A DNA stretch of 63,983 nt, counting the filler, from Olpidium bornovanus S191 (taxonomy: Eukaryota; Fungi; Olpidiomycota): the NCBI GenBank assembly GCA_017911155.1. It is 30 parts of 30 records of this genome, joined end to end, with 100 filler letters (N's around TTAATTAATTAA, not from the genome) between each part and the next. Parts side by side here need not be neighbours in the genome. Positions count along the whole stretch, not along the records: positions 7,070 to 10,235 come from JAEFCI010000516.1; 29 more parts are not named here. One strand, given 5' to 3'. The translations under genes and the position numbers were made by a program. The notes beneath the pieces were generated by a model that made no database searches, was not told the DNA's origin, and saw only the letters and a list, made by a program, of their open reading frames with translations. Positions 7,071 to 7,537 of this stretch are shown one piece after another; the stretch's first letter is position 1; every line of letters starts with the position of its first letter.

Positions 7071-7537
7071 ATGCGGAGGGGCAGCGAGGGAGAATTGAGG
7101 TGCCCGACGTGCCGCGCCGTCGGTCCGTTCAGAGAACTGCTGATCGTGTCGGTGCCGGGTACGTTCGGATGTCGTATTCGTTCTTTCTTTCTTTTTTTGG
7201 CAGCCGGACCACGGGCTGGCCGGCAAATTTTGCACGCGTTTTAGGGATTCTGAAAACTCACACCTTTGGTTCGCCATCTTTCCTCGTTTCTGCGCATCTT
7301 TTATTTTTTTTCCTCCCCCCAGACATCAGCGACGGACTGCTGACTCACGTGCTGCACCCGTGCGGCCACGCCGTGGACAGCGCGGGGGCCGAGTTCTGGT
7401 CTCGCCACATCGAGATACCGCGCGGAGCTTACGAGATCACGGGCCCCTGGGGCGGCCAAGTCGAGAGCAACGAAGCCGGAGCGTGTCCGTTCTGCGGGGA
7501 GGTCGTGACCGGACAGGCCAAGCTGTATTTCCCGTGA
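7071..7537 (+). CDS. Pellino-like E3 ubiquitin ligase, C-terminal RING-like domain (5' truncated)
   Basis: Exon 7071-7158, GT-AG intron 7159-7322 (phase 1), exon 7323-7537 give CPTCRAVGPFRELL...THVLHPCGHAVDSAGAEFWSRHIEIPRG...ACPFCGEVVTGQAKLYFP*, paralleling Pellino CPMCRSVGPYVPL..THAFSPCGHVCSEKT..YWSQIPLPHG..ACPFC....RLIF. Confidence 0.82.

What the first reader, a model, noticed from the sequence alone, without database searches (positions are those of the whole stretch)
7071..7537. Pellino-type RING E3 ligase fragment in a fungus-like genome
The spliced peptide keeps the Pellino CHC2CHC2 tail almost motif for motif (CPxCRxVGP, THxxxPCGH, W..I.IP.G, ACPFC, terminal L.F). Pellino is best known from animal Toll/IL-1R signalling, where it binds phospho-IRAK through a cryptic FHA domain. 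A GC-rich, GT-AG-intron-containing copy looks native, suggesting a phosphothreonine-reading ubiquitin ligase in a lineage with no known TLR/IRAK pathway, hence an unknown kinase partner. There is a ~12-aa insertion before ACPFC. I cannot say how widespread Pellino is in basal fungi.
Basis: partly seen in the sequence, partly recalled or inferred. Interest (0 to 1): 0.75.

Follow-up and report, generated by a model that had tools for sequence, protein, structure and literature searches.

The report
Tail of a non-animal Pellino ligase gene
The piece holds the last two exons of an expressed, correctly spliced gene for a Pellino-type RING ubiquitin ligase from an unidentified non-vertebrate eukaryote; this is a real but ordinary new member of a family that databases already list outside animals, for example in Phytophthora.

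Summary
On the + strand, exon A (7071-7158) and exon B (7323-7534, stop 7535-7537) are separated by a 164-nt GT..AG intron. Together they encode the C-terminal ~100 residues of a Pellino RING-like domain.

- **Family:** exon B alone passes Pfam Pellino_RING (29.2 bits; cut-off 22.6). It scores 44 bits against an HMM built here from environmental Pellino genes. Exon A aligns just upstream, in order, at the CPxCRxxGP block.
- **Zinc ligands:** three of the four ligand pairs are present (CPTC, CGH, CPFC). The first CGH pair and any FHA domain lie beyond the contig edge.
- **Expression:** a public-run contig joins the two exons exactly, continues about 1.1 kb upstream of the piece, and runs about 590 nt into a pyrimidine-rich 3'UTR.
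- **The ~12-residue insert before CPFC:** many non-animal-looking relatives have one; the 14 named animal sequences compared do not.
- **Novelty:** FHA+RING Pellinos are already annotated in Phytophthora and Aphanomyces and occur in EukProt protists and many metagenome contigs.
- **Unresolved:** I could not identify the organism, so "fungus-like" is untested. No close relative was found (best 41% identity over 54 columns).

Verdict: a new, divergent member of a known family. The mechanism (phospho-Thr-directed RING E3) is inferred.

The parts
7071..7158 (+). Penultimate coding exon, cut at its 5' side by the contig edge. It encodes ...GELRCPTCRAVGPFRELLIVSVP plus the first base of an Asp codon. 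The second zinc-ligand pair (CPTC) is at 7101-7112 and the CPxCRxVGP block at 7101-7127.
   Evidence: Translation. Aligns to the near-invariant C-P-x-C...G columns of Pellino RINGs. Scores 10.6 bits at HMM positions 49-65. Covered without differences by the X1 contig.
7159..7322 (+). Spliceosomal intron, 164 nt, phase 1, with donor GTACGT and a long pyrimidine tract before the CAG acceptor.
   Evidence: The X1 contig joins 7157/7158 to 7322/7323, skipping 164 nt, GT..AG (table 5). Sequence.
7323..7537 (+). Last coding exon with stop TGA at 7535-7537. Features: THVLHPCGH (7343-7369, third ligand pair C..H), conserved Trp (7397-7399), lineage-type insert AYEITGPWGGQVESNEAG (7427-7480), ACPFC (7481-7495, fourth ligand pair), and terminal KLYFP (7520-7534).
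   Evidence: Pfam Pellino_RING 29.2 bits, above the cut-off of 22.6. 44.3 bits against the local Pellino RING HMM at positions 73-131. Alignments A1 and A3. Every near-invariant family column in the part it covers is kept.
7538..8130 (+). 3' untranslated region, at least 593 nt. It is strongly pyrimidine-rich (GC skew about -0.5) and has two C12 runs. The true end was not determined; an A-rich genomic stretch follows at 8131-8170.
   Evidence: The same X1 contig runs uninterrupted from 7322 to 8130 (table 8). Composition; repeats.
9282..10129 (-). Neighbouring convergent spliced transcript, not part of the Pellino gene. Its exons are 10129-9861 and 9761-9282, with a 99-nt GT..AG intron at 9762-9860 (donor GTACGT). 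Neither exon has a long ORF.
   Evidence: X1 contigs 3 and 4 (table 8). Sequence; frame translations.

Best explanation
Window 7071-7537 (+) is the 3' end of a native, transcribed, intron-containing gene for a Pellino-family E3 ubiquitin ligase in a non-vertebrate, probably microbial, eukaryote. The assembly's contig edge truncates it.

**Shown:**
- The two exons encode the C-terminal two thirds of the Pellino CHC2CHC2 RING-like domain, with ligand pairs 2-4 intact.
- The exons are spliced as modelled, and the mRNA continues about 1.1 kb upstream of the piece.

**Inferred from the family:**
- The missing upstream part carries the first CGH ligand pair and a Pellino-type 'winged' FHA domain.
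- The FHA docks onto phosphothreonine motifs made by a protein kinase.
- The RING recruits an E2~ubiquitin and polyubiquitinates the docked partner or its neighbours.

The partner cannot be IRAK or Pelle if the lineage lacks them. Candidates are other Ser/Thr kinases or DNA-damage phospho-marks of the pTQxF kind that human Pellino1 also reads.

The protein belongs to a divergent set of non-animal-looking Pellinos that carry an insert of variable length between the 'IP.G' turn and the final CPFC pair.
For: - **Pfam and local HMM:** exon B passes Pfam Pellino_RING above the gathering score by itself. The local HMM places exon A at positions 49-65 and exon B at 73-131, in order. The 7 residues around the splice fill the 7 intervening positions.
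- **Conserved residues:** alignments with tool-derived Pellino RINGs keep the near-invariant C-P-x-C, G, T-H, P-C-G-H, W, C-P-F-C and L. In 107 family members the invariant columns are CGH, C..C and CGH, with CPFC nearly invariant.
- **Transcript:** a spliced transcript contig with the exact GT..AG junction extends 1107 nt beyond the piece and 593 nt into the 3'UTR.
- **Composition:** exon GC3 is 0.83 and CpG observed/expected is 1.16.
- **Insert:** similar inserts occur in P0026, P0010/L097 (which shares 'GPW'), P0011/P0012/L088, P0043 and P0022. They are absent from the 14 named animal rows.
- **Tree:** the best tree puts exon B with P0026 and P0043, outside the animal-type clade (93/94) and the oomycete clade (98/90).
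- **FHA in relatives:** relatives carry Pellino_FHA together with the RING. P0043 scores 48 bits, P0022 74, P0067 70 and P. infestans 87. The AlphaFold model of the nearest relative, P0026, matches only Pellino1/2 FHA crystal structures (9if9, 3egb, 3ega; probability 1.00).
Against: - The FHA domain and the first zinc-ligand pair are not on the piece, so the full architecture is unproven for this gene.
- The branch of exon B in the tree is very long (2.3). Only 55 columns are informative, and support for its neighbours is modest (81/75).
- AU tests do not exclude a sister position to animal-type Pellinos (p 0.35) or oomycete Pellinos (p 0.11).
- No close relative was found anywhere. The best identity is 41% over 54 columns, and searches gave nothing usable.
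- Three deep RNA runs under the same species label showed no genuine reads on the gene. Expression is therefore documented in one study only.
- No biochemical activity was tested.
Confidence: 0.88

Rival explanations
1. The contig is contamination from an animal, so this is an ordinary animal Pellino gene that happens to sit in a non-animal assembly.
For: Pellino is best known and most abundant in animals. Most named hits are animal. The AU test on 55 columns cannot reject a grouping of exon B with the animal-type clade (p 0.35).
Against: - Animal Pellino RINGs are tightly conserved and lack the insert. Exon B has it and lies outside the animal-type clade in the best tree.
- A search of 1.84 billion cluster representatives found no Pellino within reach of exon B. 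A normal animal orthologue would be expected to find one.
- CpG observed/expected of 1.16 and GC3 of 0.83 rule out a vertebrate. By my recollection this composition, with the C/T homopolymer-rich UTR, is also unusual for the invertebrate genomes I know (not tested).
Confidence: 0.04
2. The gene was acquired from a large DNA virus. Entomopoxvirus encodes a Pellino, and giant viruses encode many RINGs. On this reading it sits as a viral insertion in a protist genome.
For: - A viral Pellino (MsEPV) is described in PMC10383966.
- With generic RING families masked, the nearest ESM-Atlas cluster was a Nucleocytoviricota cluster (score 0.87, below the 0.9 lead threshold).
- P0043, which groups weakly with exon B, lies in metagenome contigs of dense ORFs mostly without Pfam hits.
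Against: - The gene has a spliceosomal GT..AG intron with the same GTACGT donor as the neighbouring unrelated transcript.
- It has a long 3'UTR and GC-rich codons.
- The P0043 contigs have 50% GC, and their runs of same-strand ORFs look equally like a eukaryote with short introns.
- The Atlas score is only a lead.
Confidence: 0.05
3. It is a decaying pseudogene or exon remnant: a 'fragment' in the genome itself rather than a gene cut by the assembly.
For: Only about 100 codons are visible. The piece begins inside the domain.
Against: - Both exons are open in frame and end at a proper stop.
- All near-invariant family residues in the covered part are intact.
- The mRNA is spliced precisely and extends 1107 nt upstream of the contig edge.
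Confidence: 0.03

Closest known systems
Animal Pellino / PELI1-3 (Pfam PF04710 Pellino_FHA + PF20723 Pellino_RING)
   Same: - The RING-like tail is the same: C-P-x-C-R-x-x-G-P, T-H-x3-P-C-G-H-x9-W-S, C-P-F-C and a terminal L-x-F.
- Exon B passes the Pfam family threshold.
   Different: - There are about 12 extra residues between the 'IP.G' turn and CPFC, and one extra residue after WS.
- Identity to the canonical-type environmental Pellino RINGs of alignment A1 is only about 35-42% over the aligned exon-B columns.
- There is no evidence for an IRAK/Pelle partner.
- The FHA part is not visible on the piece.
Oomycete Pellinos (e.g. 'Pellino [Phytophthora infestans]' P0186; Aphanomyces P0154/P0175/P0198)
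   Same: They are non-animal proteins with FHA+RING architecture that are already annotated as Pellino. They show that the family exists outside Metazoa.
   Different: - Oomycete RINGs have an even shorter loop before CPFC.
- They replace T-H with E/D-C and lack the conserved Trp.
- Exon B does not group with them in the best tree, although the AU test (p 0.11) does not exclude it.
Divergent environmental/protist Pellino-like proteins: P0026 (Logan SRR19631090), P0043 (ENA metagenomes), P0010 = L097 (JGI), P0011/P0067 (EukProt)
   Same: - They carry an insert of similar length before CPFC; 'GPW' is shared with P0010.
- They give the highest scores and identity to exon B (31 and 27 bits; 41% with P0026).
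- The FHA is retained: P0043, P0067 and P0022 by Pfam, and P0026 by its fold model.
   Different: - They are still distant; none is an orthologue-level match.
- Their organisms are unknown.
- Their coding GC is about 50%, against 67% here.
Other FHA-RING ligases (CHFR, RNF8, Dma1) - compared from general knowledge only
   Same: The same logic applies: a phosphothreonine reader coupled to a RING E3.
   Different: - They use canonical C3HC4/RING-H2 fingers and a standard FHA.
- Generic RING models score below threshold on exon B.
- No direct comparison was run here.

Membership tests
Pellino family (RING-like domain, PF20723) | Sequence passes the curated Pfam Pellino_RING gathering score | tested here: met
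   Exon B alone scores 29.2 bits against a cut-off of 22.6, E 1e-6, profile positions 84-132 of 144. No other family reaches its own cut-off.
Pellino family (RING-like domain, PF20723) | CHC2CHC2 zinc ligands, pairs 2-4 (C-x2-C, C-x-H, C-x2-C) in family spacing | tested here: met
   CPTC (7101-7112), CGH (7361-7369) and CPFC (7484-7495) fall in the invariant or near-invariant columns of 107 family members. The CHC2CHC2 definition is from PMC4484250.
Pellino family (RING-like domain, PF20723) | First ligand pair (C-G-H of the 'CGHV' block) | not testable with these tools
   It lies upstream of position 7070, off the contig. The X1 transcript contig that extends 1107 nt upstream could not be read.
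Pellino family (RING-like domain, PF20723) | Colinear order and spacing of the blocks across the splice junction | tested here: met
   Exon A aligns at HMM positions 49-65 and exon B at 73-131 of a Pellino RING HMM built from Pfam-verified environmental genes. The junction is confirmed by a transcript contig.
Pellino family (whole protein) | N-terminal Pellino-type (winged) FHA domain, PF04710 | not testable with these tools
   It is not on the piece. Support is indirect only. Relatives P0043, P0022, P0067 and P0186 have it. The model of P0026 matches only Pellino FHA crystal structures.
Pellino family (whole protein) | E3 ubiquitin ligase activity and binding of a phosphorylated kinase/partner | not testable with these tools
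   Biochemical property, inferred from family membership only.
Generic C3HC4 / RING-H2 fingers (PF13920, PF13639, PF00097) | Passes one of these Pfam models | tested here: not met
   None of these models is listed for exon B, even at E up to 10. The ESM-Atlas feature search places the fragment near generic RING clusters (score 0.92). This fits the RING superfamily but not these specific families.

The most novel reading that the evidence does not exclude
The gene represents a distinct, deeply divergent, insert-bearing Pellino lineage of microbial eukaryotes, together with P0026 and P0043. On this reading the FHA-RING Pellino architecture predates animals. Its ancestral job was to read phospho-marks unrelated to Toll/IL-1R signalling, for example DNA-damage pTQxF motifs like those bound by human Pellino1 FHA in PDB 9if9. 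IRAK/Pelle coupling would then be a later animal co-option.
Probability: 0.3. Interest if true: 0.5.

Novelty: new member of a known kind. Interest (0 to 1): 0.3.

Why it matters
Pellino is treated in the literature I could search as an animal (and entomopoxvirus) innate-immunity ligase. I found no paper on any non-animal Pellino. Protein databases, however, already hold FHA+RING Pellinos from oomycetes and other protists.

This window adds one more divergent, expressed example. It also shows that a simple motif pattern recovers dozens of such genes from metagenomes. Its value is as a data point for the pre-animal history of the family and for finding what such ligases read where no IRAK exists. 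It is not a discovery in itself.

Tried and rejected
**Searches with exon B that gave nothing usable**
- phmmer against 1.84 billion representatives returned 9 hits. Pfam scans of eight of them showed unrelated repeat or zinc-ribbon proteins (HMBD etc.); the ninth matched in 54 short stretches.
- The word-indexed protein search with the 145-aa read-through ORF, region 76-145, found nothing.
- The search for related loci on metagenomes with exon B found nothing.
- Exact look-up of 10 ORFs of the piece found none in the collection.
- The PDB sequence search returned only chance 'Pizza' repeat hits; no Pellino RING structure is held.
- ESM Atlas (two calls) returned only generic RING clusters, plus a sub-threshold Nucleocytoviricota cluster.
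- Rfam and tRNA scans of the piece found nothing above threshold.

**Organism identity**
- Run and organism names are coded.
- Three RNA runs with the same label gave only poly-C junk.
- SRA and ENA accessions of relatives carry no taxon in these tools.

**Phylogeny**
- The 55-column tree and the AU tests do not resolve the position.

**Literature**
- Two Pellino papers were not held. The paper I wanted for Pellino's taxonomic range was one of them; that it mentions plant homologues is only my recollection.

**Readings considered and rejected**
- A generic RING finger: Pfam's best and only passing family is Pellino_RING.
- A chance motif match: E 1e-6, colinear exons and a verified splice.
- A coding function for the minus-strand transcript: no long ORF in either exon.

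Full report
**1. What is in the sequence**

The usable piece is window 7070-10235: 3166 nt, GC 0.57, CpG observed/expected 1.16.

- On the + strand, the frame starting at 7071 is open from the contig edge and reads MRRGSEGELRCPTCRAVGPFRELLIVSVP.
- Base 7158 (G) is followed by GTACGT.
- 164 nt later, a long pyrimidine tract ends in CAG (7320-7322).
- Bases 7323-7324 (AC) complete an Asp codon.
- The frame from 7325 then reads ISDGLLTHVLHPCGHAVDSAGAEFWSRHIEIPRGAYEITGPWGGQVESNEAGACPFCGEVVTGQAKLYFP, with a stop at 7535-7537.

**2. The splice and expression are real**

I laid public runs on the piece. A 2009-nt Logan contig of run X1 (depth 28.7) does the following:

- covers 7070-7157 with no differences;
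- skips 164 nt with GT..AG ends;
- continues from 7322 to 8130 with one substitution and three small homopolymer-length differences.

Its coordinates place 1107 further nucleotides upstream of the contig edge. The gene is therefore truncated by the assembly, not in the genome. The 3'UTR is at least 593 nt, pyrimidine-rich (GC skew about -0.5) and contains two C12 runs.

Runs X1-X3 and X5 belong to one study. Three deep RNA runs carrying the same coded species label showed only poly-C artefacts on the piece. Either expression is condition-specific, or the label is a host or environment label. I could not decide which.

**3. Family assignment**

- Exon B alone hits Pfam PF20723 (Pellino_RING) at 29.2 bits, gathering score 22.6, E 1e-6, profile positions 84-132 of 144. 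All other families are below their cut-offs.
- Exon A, at 29 aa, is too short for Pfam.

To get family sequences from a tool rather than from memory, I scanned the metagenome contigs with the degenerate DNA pattern for T-H-x3-P-C-G-H-x9-W-S. Of 97 loci, about 23 encode Pellino-like segments. Pfam confirmed uninterrupted full-length FHA+RING ORFs, such as L042 (446 aa), L048, L023, L054, L084 and L040. It also confirmed RING-only ORFs: L025, L088 and L097.

An HMM built from ten of these RING domains scores exon B at 44.3 bits (positions 73-131) and exon A at 10.6 bits (positions 49-65). The exons are therefore colinear, and the seven residues around the junction fill the seven intervening positions.

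In the alignments, every near-invariant column in the covered part is kept: C-P-x-C, G, T-H, P-C-G-H, W, C-P-F-C and L. In 107 family members, the invariant columns are CGH, C..C and CGH, with CPFC nearly invariant. This matches the CHC2CHC2 arrangement described for Pellino (PMC4484250).

The piece thus carries ligand pairs 2-4. Pair 1 and the FHA domain lie off the contig.

**4. The insert and the nearest relatives**

The stretch between the 'IP.G' turn and CPFC is 18 residues here, against about 6 in the 14 named animal sequences compared. Oomycete sequences are shorter still. Many unnamed environmental and protist sequences have inserts of 3-20+ residues. P0010 (= L097) even shares 'GPW'.

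Profile searches seeded with divergent members plus the two exon rows returned 57 and 133 proteins. None is close to exon B. The best local phmmer scores are 31 bits for P0026 (a 433-aa ORF on a Logan contig of SRR19631090) and 27 bits for P0010.

A maximum-likelihood tree on the 55 columns that exon B covers gives the following:

- Exon B sits on a very long branch (2.3) with P0026 (81/75) and P0043 (81/89).
- It falls outside the animal-type clade (93/94) and the oomycete clade (98/90).

AU tests cannot exclude a sister position to the animal-type clade (p 0.35) or the oomycete clade (p 0.11). The placement is therefore suggestive only.

**5. Is the FHA likely to be there?**

Relatives pair the RING with Pellino_FHA: P0043 scores 48 bits, P0022 74, P0067 70 and P. 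infestans P0186 87. P0026 is sub-threshold at 19 bits.

An AlphaFold2 model of P0026, built with the 107-row alignment, has mean pLDDT 71 and pTM 0.75. Its only significant PDB matches are the Pellino1/2 FHA crystal structures 9if9, 3egb and 3ega (probability 1.00, E down to 5e-7). The alignment contains canonical Pellinos, so this result is not fully independent.

I infer, with roughly 0.8 confidence, that the missing upstream exons of the window's gene encode a Pellino-type FHA. This is not shown.

**6. Mechanism**

- *Shown:* a RING-like zinc-binding tail of the Pellino type, expressed and spliced.
- *Inferred from established knowledge of the family (PMC4484250; PDB titles):* the FHA docks on phosphothreonine motifs, and the RING recruits an E2~ubiquitin and builds chains on the docked partner.

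PDB 9if9 is Pellino1 FHA bound to an MDC1 pTQxF peptide. This shows that even the human protein reads non-IRAK, DNA-damage marks, so a similar partner is a reasonable candidate in a lineage without IRAK. What the insert does is unknown. It lies in a loop between the third and fourth ligand pairs.

**7. Rivals**

- *Animal contamination* is unlikely. The insert, the tree position, the composition (GC3 0.83 and no CpG depletion) and the failure of a 1.84-billion-representative search to find any Pellino within reach all argue against it.
- *Viral origin* is hinted at only by a sub-threshold Atlas hit and by the ORF-dense context of P0043. The spliceosomal intron argues against it, because the unrelated neighbouring transcript uses the same GTACGT donor.
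- *A pseudogene* is contradicted by the intact frame, the conserved residues and the spliced mRNA.

**8. Comparison with what is known, and novelty**

The papers I could search treat Pellino as an animal and entomopoxvirus family. I found none on non-animal members.

The sequence databases already hold them. Examples are 'Pellino [Phytophthora infestans]', 'E3 ubiquitin-protein ligase pellino 2 [Phytophthora pseudosyringae]', other Phytophthora and Aphanomyces proteins with both Pfam domains, EukProt entries, and many metagenome and Logan proteins.

The finding is therefore a new, divergent member of a known kind. The 'fungus-like' origin could not be tested because organism names are coded, and nothing else on the piece is taxonomically informative.

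**9. Other features of the piece**

- A convergent minus-strand transcript runs from 10129 to 9282. It has a 99-nt GT..AG intron (9762-9860) and no long ORF in either exon.
- The roughly 1.1-kb gap between the two transcripts is full of homopolymers: T25, A20, A14, A12 and G11.
- The piece ends in C18 and G21 runs, which probably caused the assembly break.

Noticed in passing
window 9282-10129 (minus strand): A second, convergent spliced transcript has exons 10129-9861 and 9761-9282. Its 99-nt GT..AG intron has a GTACGT donor identical to that of the Pellino intron. Neither exon has a long ORF, so it may be a non-coding RNA or the UTR of a gene lying beyond the right edge.
   Followed up: partly
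window 8130-9280 and 10131-10232: The intergenic gap is packed with homopolymers: T25 at 8839-8863, A20 at 8951-8970, A14, A12 and G11. There is also a (GAAG)8 array at 8529-8559. The piece ends in C18 and G21 runs, which probably broke the assembly. In RNA run X24, reads pile up only on these poly-C stretches, giving false 'joints'.
   Followed up: partly
runs X1-X24: Only runs of study P1 (X1-X3, X5) hold the spliced mRNA. Three deep RNA runs with the same coded species label (X21, X15, X24) show no genuine reads. Either the species label is a host or environmental label, or expression is condition-specific.
   Followed up: no
L100-L103 (ENA metagenome contigs, gene at L100:10001-11206): P0043 is a 401-aa FHA+RING Pellino that groups weakly with the window's exon B. 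It recurs in four ENA samples on 13-28 kb contigs (GC 0.50), among dense ORFs almost all without Pfam hits. This could be a large DNA virus or a compact eukaryote with short introns.
   Followed up: partly
L001-L097: The single degenerate pattern for T-H-x3-P-C-G-H-x9-W-S pulled about 23 genuine Pellino genes out of 97 metagenome matches. They include intronless full-length ORFs of 427-828 aa. The family is common in environmental eukaryotes.
   Followed up: partly
PDB 9if9: A 2025 crystal structure shows Pellino1 FHA bound to an MDC1 pTQxF phosphopeptide. This points to a DNA-damage role that does not need IRAK, which bears on what non-animal Pellinos might read.
   Followed up: no
L099:7353-9014: In the Logan contig that carries P0012, a relative of the EukProt Pellino P0011, the FHA-like and RING parts are called as separate ORFs about 300 nt apart. 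This suggests an intron between the domains. APC1-like and UBA genes lie nearby.
   Followed up: no
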